DNA of 63,572 bases, filler included, from Octopus bimaculoides (taxonomy: Eukaryota): the NCBI RefSeq assembly GCF_001194135.2. It is 7 parts of 5 records of this genome, joined end to end, with 100 filler letters (N's around TTAATTAATTAA, not from the genome) between each part and the next. Parts side by side here need not be neighbours in the genome. Positions count along the whole stretch, not along the records: positions 53,606 to 58,621 come from NC_068981.1; 6 more parts are not named here. The stretch is one strand, 5' to 3'. Shown in pieces: positions 5,176-58,837 of the stretch. The notes under the pieces are model-generated. The model was not told the DNA's origin. It did not search any database and saw only the letters and a program-made list of their open reading frames with translations. How positions within the stretch are numbered: position 1 is the stretch's first letter; each line of letters starts with the position of its first letter. A program made the translations under genes and the position numbers.

Positions 5176-6890
5176 ATAACGTGTGCATCATTACGTAGAA
5201 AGTAAAAGCGACATTGAATATCGGTCTCCCCCGTCATATTTCGCTGTAGGTTAGAAACTGGGAAACAATCCATATGGTGGTAGTTAGTTCATTCCAGACG
5301 TCGTCTCTACCGCAACAAGATGAAAAGCCTTTCGAGCTTTCTAGCTTCCGGCCAAAATCTTTGCCGTAATGTGATGTGGTTCGGAGGGCGAGCTATACGA
5401 AAAAAGATGATTGGGTAGTATGTCGCTCGACTAGAACTCTTAGTTTGTCCGCCATGCTAACTACAAAACAAAGCTGACAGAAAATATATACTTGAAGATT
5501 TTCGAAAACGGGTTGTGCGGTGGAGACACTATTTCTTTTCATTCTGTTTTAAGAATAATATTTTCAATTCTGCAGAATGATGCAATCATGTAACTTGGTT
5601 CAGTATATTACTGGTTGCTTCTAGCTTCTCTAAAACGCTACTTCAAATTTTATGAAATTCGTTCATTCTGTATATGTCTTCTATTCAGCTAACTTAACTC
5701 AATCTTACTTGCACAAACCCCTCATAAGTAAGAGAATATATATATATATATATATANNNNNNNNNNNNNNNNNNNNNNNNNNNNNNNNNNNNNNNNNNNN
5801 NNNNNNNNNNNNNNNNNNNNNNNNNNNNNNNNNNNNNNNNNNNNNNNNNNNNNNNNNNNNNNNNNNNNNNNNNNNNNNNNNNNNNNNNNNNNNNNNNNNN
5901 NNNNNNNNNNNNNNNNNNNNNNNNNNNNNNNNNNNNNNNNNNNNNNNNNNNNNNNNNNNNNNNNNNNNNNNNNNNNNNNNNNNNNNNNNNNNNNNNNNNN
6001 NNNNNNNNNNNNNNNNNNNNNNNNNNNNNNNNNNNNNNNNNNNNNNNNNNNNNNNNNNNNNNNNNNNNNNNNNNNNNNNNNNNNNNNNNNNNNNNNNNNN
6101 NNNNNNNNNNNNNNNNNNNNNNNNNNNNNNNNNNNNNNNNNNNNNNNNNNNNNNNNNNNNNNNNNNNNNNNNNNNNNNNNNNNNNNNNNNNNNNNNNNNN
6201 NNNNNNNNNNNNNNNNNNNNNNNNNNNNNNNNNNNNNNNNNNNNNNNNNTATATATACATACATGCATACAAACCTACATCCATCCATCCATCCAACCAT
6301 CCATCCATCCATCCATCCATACATACATACATACATACATACATACATACATACATACATACATGCATACTTACATACGTGCAGACTAGCTCTACTACCC
6401 AGTTGACTCTCGCACCTCTGCGTGTGTTCTATGGTTCTACGTATACATTCTAACACGGAGATTTCCATGGAATTCTTTTCACTGTATTGGTAAAATAAGA
6501 CAAAAAAAAAATTCTTCCTCTAATTTTTGCGTCTCTTGCTTCTTTTTCCTCATTTTACATACTGGACTAATAAATATACGGGTCAATTCATTTAGAGTTT
6601 TTCTGCTTCCACTCTATGTGAAATCTGTTTAATCTATCTATGTATAAATGCGTCTACAAGCATAAGTGCATGTACATATATATATATCTATGTACATATC
6701 TTTGTATTTTCGTCCTTGGTCATATATTGATGCACTGATGGTATTTATACATGTTTTAGATATTTTCATCAGTTTTCTACTAATCCTTTTGTTATTTCTG
6801 CACTTCAGTCCGCATTTGGCAAACTTTCTGTAATTTCTGATACTGGTTACTGGTTGAATGAGAATTTAGAGTTAAGTTGTTGCTCAAAAT

Positions 6891-7164
6891 CAGGGATTCT
6901 CAACCAATATTTTAAAAATTTATGGACTCATCTGATTACTATTCTATTCTTTCAAAATTTTTATTTTGTTTTATGCACATTAGCTTTAGTCGGTTGAACT
7001 ATGTAAAGTGTTGTAGTTTCTTGCAATACACACCAATGCTTACATCTAAAGCAAAATTTTTTAAATAATATTGTGGATCCTCAATTTACTATTTCGTTGC
7101 TTGAATCTTCAAAACTCTTATATGGATCCTCAAGGAAAATTTAGACCTCGTTTGAGAACCACAG
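6891..7164. mobile_element. hAT (Charlie-like) MITE
   Basis: Imperfect TIRs CAGGGATTCTCAAC / TTTGAGAACCACAG; perfect 8-bp TSD CTCAAAAT. Confidence 0.8.
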
Positions 7165-7784: not shown

Positions 7785-8149
7785 TTAAACCACCTTGAAA
7801 ATAATCTGGAGGAGACCTCTTTACAACAGAATGACAGCAGTTGGTGAATATCCCTAAGTGATGTGAATTATTGAGGACTTTACCTCAAATAGGAATGTAT
7901 CGTGATTATGGATGGCTACCTGACCGATTTGTTTGAACTACTACTCCTTCCTGAAGAAAGTAGCATGCTGTCCACCACTTCATCATTTTTAATAGCTTAA
8001 TGGAGTTAATCATGAGAGTACTGAAAATCTTAGATAAACATCGATGTCTTTTCAATAAACATTCTGATGACAAAATTCTAATATCCACGTTCTTTCATAA
8101 ATTGAAAACCATCCCCTAAACAGTTAGAGGAAGCATGTGAAATAGCAAT

Positions 8150-8370
8150 AGCTTAGGGATACAAATAAACGGTAAAAAAGGAGCAAGTCCTGACACTGAG
8201 CAAAAGATGATTACATTTGAATGGTTGTGAAGTAGAACGCGACACAGAATTTGTTTTTCGGCAGTTTAGAAGCGAATACACATGAAGATGTGAAAAGTCT
8301 GGTCGCATTTGGAATCTACAACGTTTGGAAGAAACTAAGAATCTGAAAGAGGTTAGCAAAATTTATTTTA
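8150..8370 (+). mobile_element. Possible degenerate RTE-clade RT fragment
   Basis: LHLNGCEVERDTEF...GRIWNLQRL loosely resembles the RTE L.G..LE.V..F.YLG...AW..L block. Confidence 0.3.
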
Positions 8371-8377
8371 TGGAATC

Positions 8378-8701
8378 ATGATGATGATGAAGCTGATGAT
8401 GATGATGATGATGATGATGACGACGACGACGATGACGACGATGATGATGATGATAATGATGATGATGACGATGTGGTTGTGGTAATGGTGATCGAGATGG
8501 GAGTAGTGGTGGTTGTAGTGATGGTAGTGGTGGCAGTAGTGGTAATGGTATTAGTGGCGAGAGTGCAAAAGGGGGAAGGGGTCGGTGGTGATGGTGATAG
8601 TGTTTATCATGATCATGATGATTGTGATGATGACGACGGCAACAAAGATGTCAATCATTATCATGACTAATCTCTACAACCCCAACCACAAGTCGCTGCT
8701 G

Positions 8702-8740
<39 letters not shown>
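8378..8740. repeat. (GAT)n/(GAC)n/(GGT)n/(CAT)n compound repeat
   Basis: Direct inspection. Confidence 0.9.
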
Positions 8741-8741
<1 letters not shown>

Positions 8742-10049
8742 TTTTTTCTTCCATATATCACCTTTTCTTCTTACTTTTTTCTTTCCCTTTATCATCCTTT
8801 CTTTTATCCTTATTATCATAGACGGTGCAGTCGTATAGCAGAGCAGTTGTTTTGCTATATTAATTGTTGAATTGTTTCCATTTCTTGTCGTTGTTGGTGA
8901 TTTTCTTCTTCTCAGCTGAATCTTTTCATTAAAACCACCACAAAGCAAAACCCCCGCCAAGCCGGCTTGATTCGTTTCACTTGACAATTATCTTGACACC
9001 TACGTTTCTTAATTTGCCATTTACTCTTGCATTTTATATTAATAAACTTAAATACATGCACACGCACACACACACACACACCCACACACACACACACACA
9101 CGCACACACACACACACACACACGCGCATACACAATACACACACATGTATATGTATATGTATATGTATATGCGTGTATGTGTGTTTGTGTATTTGTGTGT
9201 ATGTGTAGAAACACTAGCAGTAACACCACCATCATTATTATTATTATGATTATTATTAATATTATTATTCGCCGCGGAATACGTAAGACGTTCTTTGGAA
9301 CACGCTTCGTAAGTTATGTTTTAAACTGCGTTTTTCACCCTGTCTTTACAAATATATGTTATTTATTTTTGTTACAATCTGACAATAAGAACACCAGGAA
9401 CCTTTGGGCAGGTGATCAGTTGTTGTTTCTGCCCCGTAAAGGGCAGTATTTATTCATCCGATTATCTATTGCACTCAGAAAACGCCCCATCTTGTGTAAA
9501 AAACACGAACACACAAGATGGCGCCATCATCACCACTACCATCGGCATCAGCGACCATCATTGGGAGCGTTGAGAGGGAAAGCCGTTCCTCCCACCAGCC
9601 CTCGCACAGAAGATCTCCCCCCCCCCTACATCCCGCGTCATATCACTTACTCCAAGCGACAGCAACAACAACAACAGCCTAAGCAATGTGAGAGCTCGTG
9701 AAGAATGTGAAATCAGTAGCAACGACAGTAGGAATGTGAAGACAGAAAAGAAAGNNNNNNNNNNNNNNNNNNNNNNNNNNNNNNNNNNNNNNNNNNNNNN
9801 NNNNNNNNNNNNNNNNNNNNNNNNNNNNNNNNNNNNNNNNNNNNNNNNNNNNNNNNNNNNNNNNNNNNNNNNNNNNNNNNNNNNNNNNNNNNNNNNNNNN
9901 NNNNNNNNNNNNNNNNNNNNNNNNNNNNNNNNNNNNNNNNNNNNNNNNNNNNNNNNNNNNNNNNNNNNNNNNNNNNNNNNNNNNNNNNNNNNNNNNNNNN
10001 NNNNNNNNNNNNNNNNNNNNNNNNNNNNNNNNNAAAAAAAAAAAACATA

Positions 10050-53605: not shown

Positions 53606-53750
53606 ATTCCCATAACTTAGCAGTTCAGCAAAAGAGACGGATAAAATAAGTACTAGGCTTACAAAAAATAAGTCCTGGGGTCAATTTACTCGACTAAAGA
53701 CGGTGCTCCAGCATGGCCGCAGTCAAATGACTGAAACAAGTAAAAGAATA
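53606..53750 (+). mobile_element. SINE family A, 3' part
   Basis: cataacttagcagttcagcaaaagagac...tgactgaaacaagtaaaagaata. Confidence 0.8.
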
Positions 53751-53904
53751 TGGATAGATAGATATGTTAATGGCTAATTAATCTTTCATGATATTATTAT
53801 TCACAGGTATAATTGCATCATTCATAATGAGATTATTTCTTAAAAGACTCTTTCAAATTTATGCTAACGATATTTATTGTTTTTTAATTTCTCCTCATTT
53901 ATCT

Positions 53905-54095
53905 AAAATGAGGCTCCCATGCTGGTGGCACGCAATAAGCACCATTCATGCATGGGTTGTTTTGTCAGTGCCTCCTGACTGGCTCCTTGTGCTGCTGGCA
54001 CGTAAAAAGCACCATCTGAGCGTGCTCGATGCCAGCCCCCGTCCCCTCCCAACCCAGTTGGCTCCTGTGCTGGTGGCACATAAAAAGCTGTGAAT
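53905..54095 (+). repeat. Family C 5' tandem units (about 65-75 bp, x3)
   Basis: ggctcc..gtgc..gtggcacgtaaaaagcacc repeated. Confidence 0.7.
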
Positions 54096-54214
54096 GATGT
54101 CATTGGAACCATAGGAAAAAGGCAATTCTGTGTTGTTATCTACCATCAGCGACAGATGCTGAGTTGTCATTGATAACCACTAGGAACTTGTTCTTACATC
54201 CAAACAGCAAATAG

Positions 54215-54455
54215 GGTAGCAAGCTGGCAGAACCGTCAGCACGTCAGGCAAAATGCTCAGCAGCATTTCACTTGTCTTTACATTTTGAGATCAAATTCCA
54301 CCAAGGTCTACTTTATCTTTCATCCTTTCTTTCGGGGTCAATAAAATAAGTACCAATTATTGACCCCCGCCTCCGGTGGGGTGGGGGGTTCAATGAAATC
54401 GACTTACCCCTCCCCTTAAATTACTGGCCTTGTGCTGAAATCTGAAACTGATATT
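54215..54455 (+). mobile_element. SINE family B
   Basis: gcaagctggcagaaccgtcagcacg head and core. Confidence 0.8.
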
Positions 54456-54612
54456 GAAACAGCTTTGTTGTTCTTGAAATATCTTTGATCTTTTGAAGAA
54501 AAATAAAACCTTCCACACAAAATGTTTAATATTTGTAAATTTTCAATGTTAAGTATATAAATTGAAGAAAATTAACTTAATGCTTCTAAATGCTGTTGAC
54601 ATGCATGTTTAG

Positions 54613-54657
54613 CATGTTCATACACGTATTCTAAATCATGCAAATATCTTTGATACG
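54613..54657 (+). CDS. Candidate upstream 45-nt exon (HVHTRILNHANIFDT)
   Basis: tttag| acceptor, ACG|GTAATT donor, phase 0->0, compatible with the 54790 exon. An alternative mini-exon at 54671-54709 (KSNPPSRQCVKKW) is equally possible. Confidence 0.25.
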
Positions 54658-54789
54658 GTAATTGTCTCAGAAAAGCAATCCTCCCTCTAGACAATGTGTG
54701 AAAAAGTGGGTAATTTTCTTTTCTGTGTTTTTTTAAGAAATTTTACTTAAATCTAGATATGAGTTTGTTTTTTTTTTCTTTATTTCCAG

Positions 54790-54863
54790 AGAATGTATTT
54801 GAGTTTGACCTTGGCAATATTGAAGCATTCCCAGACGCGGCACCATCTATTGTCCCATGTGTT
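54790..54863 (+). CDS. Internal coding exon of an unidentified host gene (RMYLSLTLAILKHSQTRHHLLSHV + TT)
   Basis: Strong U2 acceptor (long T tract, tttccag|) and 3' boundary at a perfect U12 donor ATATCCTTT (54864). The 74-nt phase 0->2 frame is open and joins the next exon in frame. Confidence 0.7.
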
Positions 54864-55084
54864 ATATCCTTTGTTTTTCATTTATATGTAATCATTGTCA
54901 ATTTAACCACCAAAACTGGATATCTTCCATAGAATTTCTTGAATGTTAGAATATTACTGTTCTGTATTTTAGAGATGAAGAATTCTGTACAGTATTTACA
55001 TTGGATGGATATGTGTCCTCATCTTTGTTGTTACCACGTTTCGGCTGACTATTAGGTTTACAAGCCCTGAAATTCACTCTATAA

Positions 55085-55330
55085 TTGCCACGGTTAAGAG
55101 TGTGGGCTACTAACTCCAAGATTCCAATTTCAATTCCAAGCAGTACCTTGAATAAATAATAATAATAATAATAATAATAACATCAGCAAAAAAAACCTTA
55201 GGAATGAGAACCCAGGGCTGGGTTCAAAATTCTTACCAGGACACCTGATGAAGGCTGGAGAGTAAATCAACTGAAATGTTGTGGTAACAACAAACAAGAT
55301 GAGGACACATATCCGTCCAATGTAAATAAT
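55085..55330 (+). mobile_element. Composite element: tRNA-like head + (TAA)n + Penelope-like pseudo-LTR with hammerhead motif
   Basis: Degenerate B-box-like ATTTCAATTCC (55127-55137), (TAA)n about 55152-55179, CTGATGA core 55245-55251, GAAA 55273-55276; inverted partial copy of the 3' part at 54990-55048. Confidence 0.55.
55239..55285 (+). ncRNA. Degenerate minimal type I hammerhead ribozyme (Penelope-associated type)
   Basis: Stem I GACAC/GTGGT, CUGAUGA, stem II GGCTG/CAACT, GAAA-U-GUU with no stem III loop. The inverted copy at 55036-55048 preserves the unmutated CAGCC-GAAAC-GT. Confidence 0.55.
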
Positions 55331-55816
55331 GTGAATAACATAATAATGTTAGAAAATTATTTTTGATACAGATCTATTATGATATATATTATTATCTGCA
55401 TCTCCACTGCATCTCCAGAATTGCTGTATCTTAGATATGGATTAGTAAAGTCCATACAGACACACATGGACACATACACATGGACACACACATACAGACA
55501 CACAGAGACACAGACAGACACACACACACACACACATAGACAGACACACCCACACACATGGACACACACACGGACACACACATACAGACACACAGAGACA
55601 GAGACAGACACACACATACAGAAACACACACACACACACACATATAGAGACACTCACATACAGACAGATACACACACACACAGACACACACATATGGACA
55701 GACACACATGGACAGACACACATGGACACATACACATGGACACACATACACATATTTTATTCTAAATATGCATTGCTCCTAACTTATTCTGCATTGGTTT
55801 CCTTAATTGTTGTTAC

Positions 55817-55919
55817 GTTTGACAAGATTAAATTTCCCGTCTTTCTTCACATTAAACCCCCGGACGATAAAGGACTTATTGAAATTGTGCCTACTGTTTG
55901 GTGGCCAAAAGTTAAAGAG
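55817..55919 (+). CDS. Internal coding exon (G + FDKIKFPVFLHIKPPDDKGLIEIVPTVWWPKVKE)
   Basis: 103 nt, open frame, protein-like composition, ends at strong donor GAG|GTAAGG in phase 0. Confidence 0.75.
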
Positions 55920-55980
55920 GTAAGGCATTTACAATAGTTATTCTTCTTCCCTCCCTCTCCATTGTGGCAACTCTTGAAGT

Positions 55981-56623
55981 TAGTGGTTCTCAACCAAGGT
56001 TCCTATGGCCAGTGGGGGGTCAGTATAAGATTTTGCTGTAAAATTTATCTGCAGTAAATCATTTATACTTCTACAATATACAAAATCATCATCATCATCA
56101 TCGTTTAATGTCCACTTTCCATGCTGGCATGGGTTGGACAGTTTCACTGGGGTCTGGGAAGCTGGGAGGCTGCACTAGGCTCCAGTCTGATCTGGCAATA
56201 TCTCTACAGCTGGATGCCCTTCTTAACACCAACCACTCTGAGAGTGTAGTGGGTGTCTTTTACATGCCTCTGGCACAGGCGCCAGTCAGGAGGTACTGAC
56301 ATCGGTCACGTTCGGATGGTATTTATACATTTGCTGGTGGCATGTAAAAAGCACCATTCAAGCATGATCATTGCCAGCGTCGCGTTACTGGCACGTGAAA
56401 ATCAACATTCGAACATGGTCGTTGCTAGTAGAAACTGTAGAAACTTTGCCAGATCAGATTGAGCCTGGTCCAGCCTTCTGGTTCACAAGTCCTCAGTCAA
56501 ACCGTCCAACCCATACCAGCATGGAAAGCAGACGTAAAATGATGATGATGATAAAAATATTACTCTGGTGTCCGGTGGAGCAAAATAGGCATGCAATAGG
56601 CTAGGAATGGTTGACAACCACTG
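55981..56623. mobile_element. hAT MITE containing two head-to-head RTE-related SINEs
   Basis: Ends TAGTGGTTCTCAACC / GGTTGACAACCACTG; TSD not conserved. Confidence 0.6.
56092..56552. mobile_element. Two family C elements in head-to-head inverted orientation
   Basis: (CAT)n at the left end, (GAT)n at the right end; arms 56095-56215 and 56430-56552 are complementary. Confidence 0.8.
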
Positions 56624-56834
56624 TTCTAGAACTATTCTTCTTTCCATCATGTCCCTACAGATAATTTTATCCACAGGACTTAAAATATGAACATCTGCTG
56701 CTAACATAGCCTGTATGTGGCCTCTGAATCTGCTAGAAATGGCAACCAAATTTTCTCAAAATCACAACCTACTATCTTAAAGGAATACACATTGAATAAT
56801 TGCGGTGACAGATATCTTTTATATCTTTTTCTCA

Positions 56835-57172
56835 ACTTTTTAGACTATGGCCATGCTGGGGCACTACCTTGAAACATTTTTAGTCAGATGAATCGGCCCC
56901 AGTACTTTTTTCTTTAAGCCTGTACTTATTCTATTGGCCTTTTTTGCCAAATTGCTAAATAATGGAGATGTAAACACACTAAGACCAGTTGTCAAGCAAT
57001 GGTAGGGGACAAACACACACACACATAGATAGATATACATGCACAACAGGTTTCTTTCAATTTCCGTTTAGCAAATCCACTCACAAGGCTTTTGTGAGCC
57101 CAGGGTTACAGTAGAAGATACTTGCCCTAGGTGCCACGCAGTGGGACTGAACCCGGAACCATGTGGTTGGGA
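56835..57172 (-). mobile_element. SINE family A
   Basis: Near full-length reverse-complement homology. Confidence 0.8.
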
Positions 57173-57428
57173 AAGTCATGAATCAAATTAATAGTTTTAC
57201 GACTCTGAACCAAACACCTTAACCATTAAGCTGTGTCTTCAGCAAGTAACTTAGCACCAACTTCACTATTGAAATGACCAGAGTTGGTGATGGACTATTT
57301 TGAACTAAAGCCATGTAAAGTGGACAGTAACCAGGCAAACTTATTTCCATTAATTTAAAACTGCCCCCACCCCATGGTTTGTTGTCTTTTTGTCTCATGA
57401 ACAGATTGTTTTTGGTTCCATTTTCCAG

Positions 57429-57522
57429 GAAGGTACAGCATTACAGCCACAGACTCACAAGGAAGAAGAAGACAAACAAGCTTATCTTGCTTCATGTGAA
57501 CAACTGAAAAATAAAATTGAAG
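57429..57522 (+). CDS. Internal coding exon (EGTALQPQTHKEEEDKQAYLASCEQLKNKIE + G)
   Basis: Acceptor ttccattttccag| and donor GAAG|GTAATT. Only the phase-0 frame is open, matching the previous exon's phase. Confidence 0.75.
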
Positions 57523-57556
57523 GTAATTGTCTTACTTGACTGACGTTTTATCTCAT

Positions 57557-57579
<23 letters not shown>

Positions 57580-57599
<20 letters not shown>

Positions 57600-57995
57600 T
57601 TTTAGCGTCTATTTTCCATGTTGGCATGGGTTGGATGGTTTGACTAGGGACTGGCAAGCCAGGAAGCCGCATCAGGCTCCAATCTGATCTGGCAATGTTT
57701 CTACAGCTGGATGCCCTTCCTAACGCCAACCACTCCAAGAGTTTAGTGGGTGCTTTTTACGTGCCACTGGCACTGGCATCGGCCATGTTCAGATGATGCT
57801 TTTTACATGCCACCAGCATGGGAGCCAGTCAGGCAGCACTGGCATCGACCACGTTCGGATGGTGCTTTTTACGTACCACTGGCACAAGAGCCAGTCGGGG
57901 CGGGAGGGTGGTGCTGGCATCGACCGCATTCGGATGCTGCTTTTTACGTGCCACCAGCACAGAAAGCCAGTCAGGCGACACTGGCAATGACCCAT
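57580..57995 (-). mobile_element. Family C element with an array of 3-4 5' tandem units
   Basis: (CAT)n tail on the + strand; repeated ggtgctttttacgtgccac..gcac..gagccagtcagg units. Confidence 0.85.
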
Positions 57996-58009
57996 CACAC
58001 CCTAAAAGA

Positions 58010-58370
58010 TTGAAAGGCAAAATTGACCTCAGCAGTATTTGATTTCAGCCAATAAATAGCCAGAAGAAATACCATTAAGCACTTCATCTTCAATATGCTG
58101 ACATCTCTGCCAGCTCACCATCTTAAAAAAAAAATAATAGTAATAATACAATTCCTTTCTACTATAGGCACAAGGTCTGAAATTTTAGGGGAGGGGGCTA
58201 GTCGATAACATTGATCCCCAGTGCATAACTGGTGCTTATTTCATCAACCCCAAAAGGTTGAAAGTAAAGTCGACCTCAGTGGAATTTGAACTCAAAACAT
58301 AAAGTCGAACAAAATCCTGCTAAGCATTTTGCCCGGCATGCTAACAATTCTGCCAGCTCGCCACCTTAAT
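58010..58370 (-). mobile_element. SINE family B (partial 58010-58115 and full 58140-58370)
   Basis: Reverse-complement homology. Confidence 0.75.
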
Positions 58371-58571
58371 AAGAAGAAGAAGAATAATAAGTGATTTTAA
58401 ATTATCAAACGCAGGATAATGCTAATAATATAGCCTGAACAGGATAAACTACCCCTATTTTGCAGAAAAAAGTGTAGGTGACCAGACATGGTCAGTGTAA
58501 GCGGTTGTTTGAGCCAGATGTGGTCAGTTTAAATGCTAAAGGAACCACATTTTCCTTTTTCTCATTTTTAG

Positions 58572-58603
58572 AATATTATCCCAGTTTCCATATTTTAAGC
58601 TGA
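58572..58603 (+). CDS. Probable last coding exon (G+AA=E, YYPSFHILS*)
   Basis: Long polypyrimidine tract ttttcctttttctcatttttag|; phase 1 matches the upstream exon; TGA at 58601-58603. Sequence downstream is cut off by a spacer. Confidence 0.45.
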
Positions 58604-58837
58604 AATATTTTATGTCTTTTGNNNNNNNNNNNNNNNNNNNNNNNNNNNNNNNNNNNNNNNNNNNNTTAATTAATTAANNNNNNNNNNNNNNNNNNNNNNN
58701 NNNNNNNNNNNNNNNNNNNNNCCCGAACGTGTGAAATGCAATGTATATAACATTAGTGTATATATATACTATTAATTTTTCTATCAGTAATTAAAACAGC
58801 ACAAAGTGAGTTGGTCCTTTTCAAAGCCAATGTCAGC

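What the first reader, a model, noticed from the sequence alone, without database searches (positions are those of the whole stretch)
54864..55816. U12-type AT-AC minor intron in an unidentified gene
Seen: perfect ATATCCTTT donor, TTCCTTAAT branch site and AC acceptor 10 nt after the branch A; the exons join in frame in phase 2. Established: AT-AC introns are a rare subclass spliced by U11/U12 snRNPs, are often position-conserved, and are missed by GT-AG-only annotation. A second AC at 55822-55823 would also give an in-frame join from a different frame of the upstream exon (ENVFEFDLGNIEAFPDAAPSIVPCV|KIKFP), so the 3' site is ambiguous.
Basis: partly seen in the sequence, partly recalled or inferred. 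Interest (0 to 1): 0.7.

Follow-up and report, generated by a model that had tools for sequence, protein, structure and literature searches.

The report
Conserved AT-AC minor intron in octopus RNF123
The finding is a genuine U12-type (AT-AC) minor intron; it lies in the octopus gene for the ubiquitin ligase RNF123/KPC1, is conserved at the same codon from molluscs to birds, and is already in public gene models and minor-intron catalogues, so it is real but ordinary.

Summary
ATATCCTTT is at 54864-54872, TTCCTTAAT at 55799-55807 and AC at 55815-55816. Each motif occurs once in the window (0.09 and 0.14 expected by chance).

Three exons lie in the piece: 54790-54863, 55817-55919 and 57429-57522. 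Spliced, they give a 90-residue peptide found verbatim in two Octopus bimaculoides RefSeq proteins, RNF123 XP_052830081.1 and RNF123-like XP_014788284.1. The "unidentified gene" is therefore RNF123/KPC1 (SPRY + TPR_RNF123 + RING).

That frame is open only by chance.

A U12-type intron sits at the same codon and phase in:
- Argonauta, Lottia and one unidentified animal (AT-AC);
- Lingula and a bird (U12-type GT-AG).

Mouse and human RNF123 are listed as minor-intron genes in MIDB. Of 137 orthologues, 127 are ungapped across the junction ([VI]LFD).

Some annotations mishandle this intron. The O. vulgaris model drops VLFDK by using a weak GT-AG pair. The Lottia model skips both flanking exons.

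Verdict: a real, ancient minor intron that is already known and annotated. Interest is low.

The parts
54790..54863 (+). RNF123 exon, 74 nt, phase 0 start and phase 2 end; encodes RMYLSLTLAILKHSQTRHHLLSHV + first two bases of Leu
   Evidence: Preceded by ttctttatttccag. The translation matches O. bimaculoides XP_052830081.1 exactly.
54864..54872 (+). U12-type 5' splice site ATATCCTTT (AT subtype)
   Evidence: Only match to RTATCCTTT in the window, 0.09 expected. The same motif is at the same codon in Argonauta, Lottia and L004; it is GTATCCTTT in Lingula and the bird.
54864..55816 (+). AT-AC U12-type intron, 953 nt
   Evidence: The termini and join reproduce the annotated protein. There is no Rfam or tRNA hit inside.
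55799..55807 (+). U12 branch-point sequence TTCCTTAAT
   Evidence: Only match to TTCCTTAAY in the window, 0.14 expected. It lies 10 nt from the 3' end. The same 10-11 nt spacing is seen in all seven orthologous introns, from six species.
55815..55816 (+). AC 3' terminus of the intron
55817..55919 (+). RNF123 exon, 103 nt; third base of Leu + FDKIKFPVFLHIKPPDDKGLIEIVPTVWWPKVKE
   Evidence: tblastn gives 97% identity to O. sinensis RNF123; HMMER hits are. It ends at GAG|gtaagg.
55920..57428 (+). Ordinary U2-type GT-AG intron (gtaagg ... ttccattttccag), 1509 nt, filled with SINE-like repeats
57429..57522 (+). RNF123 exon, 94 nt; EGTALQPQTHKEEEDKQAYLASCEQLKNKIE + one base; followed by gtaatt
54859..54860 (+). 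GT inside the Val codon. With AG 55825-26 it forms the rival in-frame GT-AG pair, corresponding to the join used by the O. vulgaris model, which deletes VLFDK.
   Evidence: P0037/P0156 read LLSH|IKFP. The donor CAT|GTGTTA lacks -1G, +4A and +5G.
54989..55332 (.). MITE-like element inside the intron: 44-nt terminal inverted repeats, 91% complementary
   Evidence: I7.
55456..55752 (.). Degenerate CA-rich microsatellite inside the intron

Best explanation
Positions 54864-55816 are a 953-nt AT-AC U12-type (minor-spliceosome) intron of the octopus orthologue of RNF123/KPC1, an E3 ubiquitin ligase with SPRY, TPR_RNF123 and C-terminal RING domains.

Shown here: the consensus signals; the exact exon join (phase 2, inside the Leu codon of the conserved motif VLFD); identity of the spliced product with annotated O. 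bimaculoides RNF123; and conservation of a U12-type intron at this codon across bilaterians.

Inferred from the established mechanism of minor splicing, not tested here: U11 snRNP pairs with ATATCCTTT. U12 snRNP pairs with TTCCTTAAT and bulges a branch adenosine. The two act together as the U11/U12 di-snRNP. U4atac/U6atac.U5 then catalyses splicing. The 3' site is picked by its short distance (10-11 nt) from the branch point rather than by a polypyrimidine tract, which is why the first AC (55815-16) is used and not the AC at 55822-23.

The intron is ancestral to at least protostomes plus vertebrates. It has switched between the AT-AC subtype (cephalopods, Lottia) and the GT-AG subtype (Lingula, bird, mouse) while remaining U12-type.
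For: - The motifs are at the stated coordinates and unique in the window.
- An exhaustive HMMER search found RNF123 proteins through exons 2-3. The Argonauta hians protein P0001 carries Pfam SPRY, TPR_RNF123 and zf-C3HC4_3 and is named RNF123-like.
- The 90-aa peptide from the three spliced exons is contained verbatim in O. bimaculoides XP_052830081.1 and XP_014788284.1.
- O. sinensis RefSeq, Argonauta, Sepia pharaonis KPC1, and unnamed, uninterrupted mRNA-length contigs from sequencing-run assemblies that cluster with it at 90% identity all read VLFDKIKFP across the junction.
- Orthologous genomic loci show the same position and phase, with RTATCCTT donors and YYTTAAC branch sites 10-11 nt from the 3' end: Argonauta AT-AC 790 nt, Lottia AT-AC 239 nt, L004 AT-AC 351 nt, Lingula GT-AG 420-426 nt, bird GT-AG 440 nt.
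- 127 of 137 long orthologues align without a gap across the junction.
- RNF123/Rnf123 is listed as a minor-intron gene in mouse and human. The mouse 5'ss is CCT|GTATCCTGT and the BPS is TCTTCCTTGACA (PMC6717393 Tables S1-S2).
- Molluscs, including Octopus sinensis, are reported to carry minor introns (PMC10639083).
Against: - No RNA-seq reads of this species were examined directly. Transcript support comes through deposited gene models and through mRNA-length contigs that cluster with a cuttlefish protein.
- The O. vulgaris models CAI9715753/4 use an in-frame GT-AG pair instead, so a minor U2-spliced isoform cannot be excluded.
- The branch motif ends in T (TTCCTTAAT), not the commonest C. 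Such variants are present among accepted minor introns.
- I could not confirm by alignment that the listed mouse intron is the one at this codon. This is inferred from its exon-end bases CCT, which match the bird (…GTC CT|GTATCC).
Confidence: 0.93

Rival explanations
1. The intron is removed by the major (U2) spliceosome using GT at 54859-60 and AG at 55825-26, as in the O. vulgaris gene models. This gives ...LLSH|IKFP... without VLFDK. The AT-AC signals would then be irrelevant or used only occasionally.
For: The pair is in frame, and two deposited O. vulgaris proteins have exactly this join. A pyrimidine-rich stretch precedes the AG.
Against: - It deletes five residues that are near-invariant in 127 of 137 orthologues.
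- The donor CAT|GTGTTA lacks the -1G, +4A and +5G of the U2 consensus.
- The GT and AG are by-products of a Val codon and a Lys codon. The AG is absent in Lottia, Lingula and the bird, where the codon is AAA or the residue differs.
- RefSeq models for O. bimaculoides and O. sinensis, Argonauta and Sepia pharaonis KPC1, and the mRNA-length contigs that cluster with it, keep VLFDK.
- Other pipelines also err at this intron (Lottia skips two exons; Potamilus inserts 22 aa), which points to an annotation artefact.
Confidence: 0.05
2. AT-AC intron with the second AC (55822-23) as the 3' site, joining the ENVFEFDLGNIEAFPDAAPSIVPCV frame to KIKFP.
For: The join is in frame, and the AC is 17 nt from the branch A, still within the U12 range.
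Against: - No protein in 1.84 billion representatives matches the ENVFEF... stretch. All hits start at exon 2 (best stretches from residue 24 or later for every full-length hit).
- The other frame (RMYLSLTLAILKHSQTRHHLLSHVL) is the conserved RNF123 sequence.
Confidence: 0.01
3. Chance co-occurrence of U12-like motifs in non-coding, repeat-rich DNA, with no real exons.
For: The piece is full of SINE-like and simple repeats, and most long ORFs in it are repeat artefacts.
Against: Both motifs are unique and improbable. They flank exons that are 100% identical to an annotated protein, and they are conserved in six other species at the same codon.
Confidence: 0.01

Closest known systems
Minor (U12-type) intron of vertebrate RNF123/Rnf123, as catalogued in MIDB (Olthof et al. 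2019, PMC6717393)
   Same: Same gene. U12-type 5'ss and branch site. In the bird orthologue examined here it lies at the identical codon and phase (…NVL|FD…). The listed mouse 5'ss CCT|GTATCCTGT has the same exon-end bases.
   Different: The vertebrate intron is the GT-AG subtype; the octopus one is AT-AC. Vertebrate introns are shorter (389-440 nt against 953 nt). MIDB lists a second, weaker-scoring minor intron in the gene, which I could not place.
RefSeq gene models for O. bimaculoides RNF123 (XP_052830081.1, XP_014788284.1) and O. sinensis RNF123 (XP_029642554.1)
   Same: The window's spliced peptide is contained verbatim in both O. bimaculoides proteins.
   Different: Nothing of substance. 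This is the same locus or its orthologue. The older UniProt models (A0A0L8FNL7 and others) start at the Met inside the upstream exon and are truncated.
Classical AT-AC U12 introns (for example in NOP2/P120, SCN4A/SCN5A, CDK5; named from general knowledge)
   Same: /ATATCCTT 5'ss, TCCTTAAY branch site close to the 3' end, AC terminus, no polypyrimidine tract, and ordinary U2-type introns on either side.
   Different: Different gene. The branch motif ends in T rather than C.

Membership tests
U12-type (minor-spliceosome) intron, AT-AC subtype | 5' splice site matching /RTATCCTTT directly at the exon end | tested here: met
   ATATCCTTT at 54864-54872, a 9/9 match, unique in the window with 0.09 expected.
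U12-type (minor-spliceosome) intron, AT-AC subtype | Branch-point sequence TTCCTTRAY about 10-20 nt upstream of the 3' splice site, without a separate polypyrimidine tract | tested here: met
   TTCCTTAAT at 55799-55807, with the branch A 10-11 nt from the intron end. It is unique in the window with 0.14 expected.
U12-type (minor-spliceosome) intron, AT-AC subtype | AT...AC terminal dinucleotides | tested here: met
   AT at 54864-65 and AC at 55815-16.
U12-type (minor-spliceosome) intron, AT-AC subtype | The join yields the real mRNA/protein | tested here: met
   The spliced 90-aa peptide is verbatim in XP_052830081.1 and XP_014788284.1. mRNA-length contigs clustering with Sepia pharaonis KPC1 carry VLFDKIKFP. 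Reads of this species were not inspected directly.
U12-type (minor-spliceosome) intron, AT-AC subtype | Positional conservation as a U12-type intron in orthologues | tested here: met
   Same codon and phase, with U12 signals, in Argonauta, Lottia, Lingula, L004 and a bird. The 3' ends in L005 and L006 are also U12-like.
U12-type (minor-spliceosome) intron, AT-AC subtype | Excision depends on U11/U12/U4atac/U6atac snRNPs | not testable with these tools
   This needs a splicing assay or minor-snRNA knock-down.
U12-type (minor-spliceosome) intron, AT-AC subtype | Host genome encodes the minor spliceosome | not tested
   The snRNA genes lie outside this piece. A pan-eukaryotic survey includes Octopus sinensis and reports relative enrichment of minor introns in molluscs (PMC10639083).
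RNF123/KPC1 E3 ubiquitin ligase gene | Product belongs to the SPRY + TPR_RNF123 + C-terminal RING family | tested here: met
   Only three internal exons (the TPR_RNF123 region) lie in the piece. They are 100% identical to O. bimaculoides RNF123 aa 422-511. Full-length orthologues carry PF00622, PF25576 and PF13920.

The most novel reading that the evidence does not exclude
The weak GT-AG pair that spans the same interval, starting 5 nt upstream of the minor 5' splice site and ending 10 nt downstream of its 3' splice site (GT 54859-60 / AG 55825-26, the equivalent of the join used in the O. vulgaris models), might be a real alternative. Competition between the major and minor spliceosomes at this intron would then yield an RNF123 isoform lacking the conserved VLFDK. 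That would be a regulated switch rather than an annotation error.
Probability: 0.06. Interest if true: 0.35.

Novelty: already known. Interest (0 to 1): 0.15.

Why it matters
The main value is as a check on annotation. The intron is real. Pipelines that force GT-AG damage RNF123 models at exactly this spot: O. vulgaris loses five conserved residues, Lottia gigantea loses two exons, and unionid mussels gain a spurious insertion.

It is also a clean example of an ancient minor intron that kept its position and phase from molluscs to birds while switching between the AT-AC and GT-AG subtypes.

It opens no new question. RNF123 is a catalogued minor-intron gene, and the octopus RefSeq models already contain the junction.

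Tried and rejected
- My first query used the wrong join (ENVFEF... frame plus the second AC). The word-indexed protein search found nothing, Pfam found nothing and PDB sequences gave nothing.
- The exhaustive HMMER search with the same query succeeded only through exons 2-3. That result showed the ENVFEF frame is not coding.
- Rfam and tRNA scans of the piece were empty, so the intron hosts no known RNA gene.
- ORFs of 70 aa or more on both strands are repeat or microsatellite artefacts.
- Genomic DNA could not be fetched for Potamilus, Monodelphis and O. vulgaris because their genes exceed 100 kb. As a result, the O. vulgaris splice signals and a mammalian locus were not inspected. A bird stood in for vertebrates.
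- A second U12-like donor (GTATCCTTG) in locus L006 had no matching branch site downstream, and the bird has a plain GTAAGC there. I treated it as chance.
- The species of L004-L006 could not be identified.

Full report
**Observation**

The piece 53606-58621 is AT-rich eukaryotic DNA packed with SINE-like and simple repeats.

- Each motif (RTATCCTTT, TTCCTTAAY) occurs once in the whole window on either strand. Dinucleotide shuffles predict 0.09 and 0.14 occurrences.
- The motifs lie on the same strand, in the right order, and abut exon-like sequence.
- The upstream exon starts behind a strong pyrimidine tract and AG (…ttctttatttccag|AGAATG, exon from 54790).
- The downstream exon ends at AAAGAG|gtaagg (exon to 55919).
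- A third exon, 57429-57522, is bounded by ttccattttccag| and |gtaatt.
- The neighbouring introns are therefore ordinary U2-type, and only this one is AT-AC.

**Which frame and which 3' site**

Two frames of the upstream exon are open, so two in-frame AT-AC joins exist.

I first queried with the wrong join (ENVFEF… plus the second AC). The word-indexed search, Pfam and PDB found nothing. The exhaustive HMMER search over 1.84 billion representatives gave 25 hits, and the full-length ones matched only from exon 2 onward.

Their sequences settled the matter. The Argonauta hians protein reads …PRMYLSLTLAILRHSQTRHHLLSHVLFDKIKFPVFLHIKPPDDKGLIEMVPNVWWPKVKEEG….

The second-AC alternative is therefore wrong, and the ENVFEF frame is open by chance.

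**Gene identity**

- The Argonauta protein is named RNF123-like and carries Pfam SPRY, TPR_RNF123 and zf-C3HC4_3.
- A full-length search returned 642 RNF123 relatives at E ≤ 1e-10; the 120 best listed come from molluscs, nemerteans, brachiopods, a centipede and vertebrates.
- The 90-aa peptide encoded by the window's three spliced exons is contained verbatim in O. bimaculoides RefSeq RNF123 XP_052830081.1 (aa 422-511) and in XP_014788284.1.
- The window is therefore from O. bimaculoides or something indistinguishable from it. Its current annotation already uses this AT-AC junction.
- O. sinensis RefSeq, Argonauta, Sepia pharaonis KPC1, and several unnamed 4-5 kb contigs from sequencing-run assemblies that cluster with it at 90% identity, all read VLFDKIKFP across the junction. 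These contigs carry the whole uninterrupted ORF and so are effectively mRNAs.
- Only the three exons named above lie in the piece.

**Conservation of the intron itself**

I fetched orthologous genomic DNA and located the junction. summarises the result.

| Species / locus | Termini | Length (nt) | 5' splice site | 3' end |
|---|---|---|---|---|
| Octopus (window) | AT-AC | 953 | tt\|ATATCCTTTGTT | TTCCTTAATTGTTGTTAC\|g |
| Argonauta hians | AT-AC | 790 | ATATCCTTC | GCCTTAACTGCTGTTAC\|a |
| Lottia gigantea | AT-AC | 239 | ATATCCTTT | TCCTTAACTGATATTAAC\|a |
| Unidentified animal L004 | AT-AC | 351 | ATATCCTTT | TTCCTTAACCTTAGCCAC\|a |
| Lingula anatina (two copies) | GT-AG | 420-426 | GTATCCTTT | TYCTTAACCAATGTTAG\|a |
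| Bird, Pseudopodoces humilis | GT-AG | 440 | ct\|GTATCCTTTG | GCTTTAACTCCAGTGCAG\|c |

- In every case the intron splits the Leu codon before the conserved FD after its second base. The branch A lies 10-11 nt from the 3' end.
- Two further contigs hold only the 3' end, with TCCTTAAC…AC (L005) and TCCTTGAT…AG (L006).
- Several short predicted "proteins" from such contigs read SLTxxT directly before FDKIKFP. That is simply TCC-TTA-ACN … ACN, the branch site and AC terminus translated.
- At the protein level, 127 of 137 long orthologues align without a gap across the junction, with [VI]LFD nearly invariant.

**Comparison with what is known**

- RNF123/Rnf123 is listed as a minor-intron-containing gene in both mouse and human in MIDB.
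- Two mouse introns are listed: chr9:108069287-108069675 and chr9:108067514-108068121.
- The mouse 5'ss is CCT|GTATCCTGT and the BPS is TCTTCCTTGACA, with scores of 96.5 and 88.6 (PMC6717393 Tables S1-S2).
- The exon-end bases CCT match the bird's …GTC CT|GTATCC. I infer this is the orthologous intron, but I could not align the mouse locus.
- A pan-eukaryotic survey includes Octopus sinensis and reports molluscs and Lingula as relatively rich in minor introns (PMC10639083).
- The intron is therefore an ancient bilaterian U12-type intron that switched subtype (AT-AC versus GT-AG) between lineages. Subtype switching is a well-described behaviour of this intron class (general knowledge).

**Mechanism**

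This part is inferred from the established model and was not tested here.

1. U11 pairs with the 5' splice site and U12 pairs with the branch site, acting together as a di-snRNP.
2. U4atac/U6atac.U5 completes the spliceosome.
3. The 3' site is set by distance from the branch point.

Step 3 explains why the AC 10 nt downstream is used. It is chosen over the AC at 17 nt and the AG at 20 nt.

**Rival reading and annotation errors**

The O. vulgaris models CAI9715753/4 read LLSH|IKFP and lack VLFDK. In window coordinates this corresponds to GT 54859-60 and AG 55825-26, an in-frame GT-AG pair formed by a Val codon and a Lys codon. I consider it an annotation artefact for four reasons:

- The donor CAT|GTGTTA is weak.
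- The five deleted residues are conserved.
- The AG is absent in Lottia, Lingula and the bird.
- All other cephalopod models and mRNA-length contigs keep VLFDK.

A rare U2-spliced isoform cannot be excluded without reads.

Other pipelines fail here too. The Lottia JGI model skips both flanking exons, although both are intact in the genome. Potamilus and Sinanodonta models carry a 22-aa insertion at the junction. Ten of the 137 orthologues show gaps or read-through such as VLYPF…CTFDK.

**Inside the intron**

- A MITE-like element with 44-nt inverted termini lies at 54989-55332.
- An (AAT)n run lies at 55155-55180.
- A roughly 300-nt degenerate CA-rich microsatellite lies at 55456-55752.
- There is no known RNA family or tRNA and no credible ORF on either strand.

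**Verdict**

The gene is RNF123/KPC1. The feature is real, ancient and already known and annotated, so interest is low.

Noticed in passing
window 56085-56280 and 57582-57777 (also 53912-54088, 56332-56429, 57770-57987; inverted partners 56461-56561): Several copies, in both orientations, of a SINE-like repeat that begins after a (TCA)n/(CAT)n run (…catcatc gtttaatgtccactttccatgctggcatgggttgga…) and carries about 66-nt internal sub-repeats. They are 76-86% alike and fill the introns flanking the exons.
   Followed up: partly
window 54989-55332: MITE-like element inside the U12 intron: 44-nt terminal inverted repeats, 91% complementary, 256 nt apart, enclosing an (AAT)n run at 55155-55180.
   Followed up: no
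window 54212-54328 versus 58252-58368: 117-nt inverted repeat pair, 76% complementary and 3.9 kb apart. It brackets all three exons and is probably two copies of another interspersed repeat in opposite orientation.
   Followed up: no
L008 (Lingula anatina LFEI02000188.1) 5619-6582 and 7954-8911: The two exons flanking the minor intron, and the intron itself, are present twice in tandem about 2.3 kb apart, with a few differences (branch site TTCTTAAC versus TCCTTAAC). This is either a real local duplication or uncollapsed haplotypes in the assembly.
   Followed up: no
L007 (Lottia gigantea KB202620.1) 6639-6706 and 6946-7033: The deposited Lottia RNF123 model (LOTGIDRAFT_234381) omits both exons that flank the AT-AC intron, although both are intact in the genome.
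   Followed up: yes
P0002 / P0026 (Potamilus streckersoni, Sinanodonta woodiana proteins): These models have a 22-aa insertion exactly at the junction, ending …KTLTLRI|FDK. TLT looks like a translated CCTTAAC branch site, and the Ile codon would imply an unusual 3' terminus (…AT) if the 10-nt spacing holds. The DNA could not be fetched because the gene exceeds 100 kb.
   Followed up: partly
L006 (GCA_013332895.1 JAAUXW010013864.1) 1210: A second U12-like donor (gag|GTATCCTTG) lies two exons downstream of the conserved minor intron. No matching branch site was found, and the bird has GTAAGC at the same exon end, so this is probably chance.
   Followed up: partly
O. bimaculoides proteins P0040, P0155, P0163 versus O. 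sinensis P0157: Downstream of the window's third exon, the O. bimaculoides models disagree with each other and with O. sinensis (NKIE|GKTSRD, NKIEEKSPQGKT, NKIEGNSEIFYPQGKT versus NKIEEIERLQVEMLKVLLIHDDKKEPQGKT). The next exon is either missing from, or mis-annotated in, that assembly. It lies beyond the piece.
   Followed up: no
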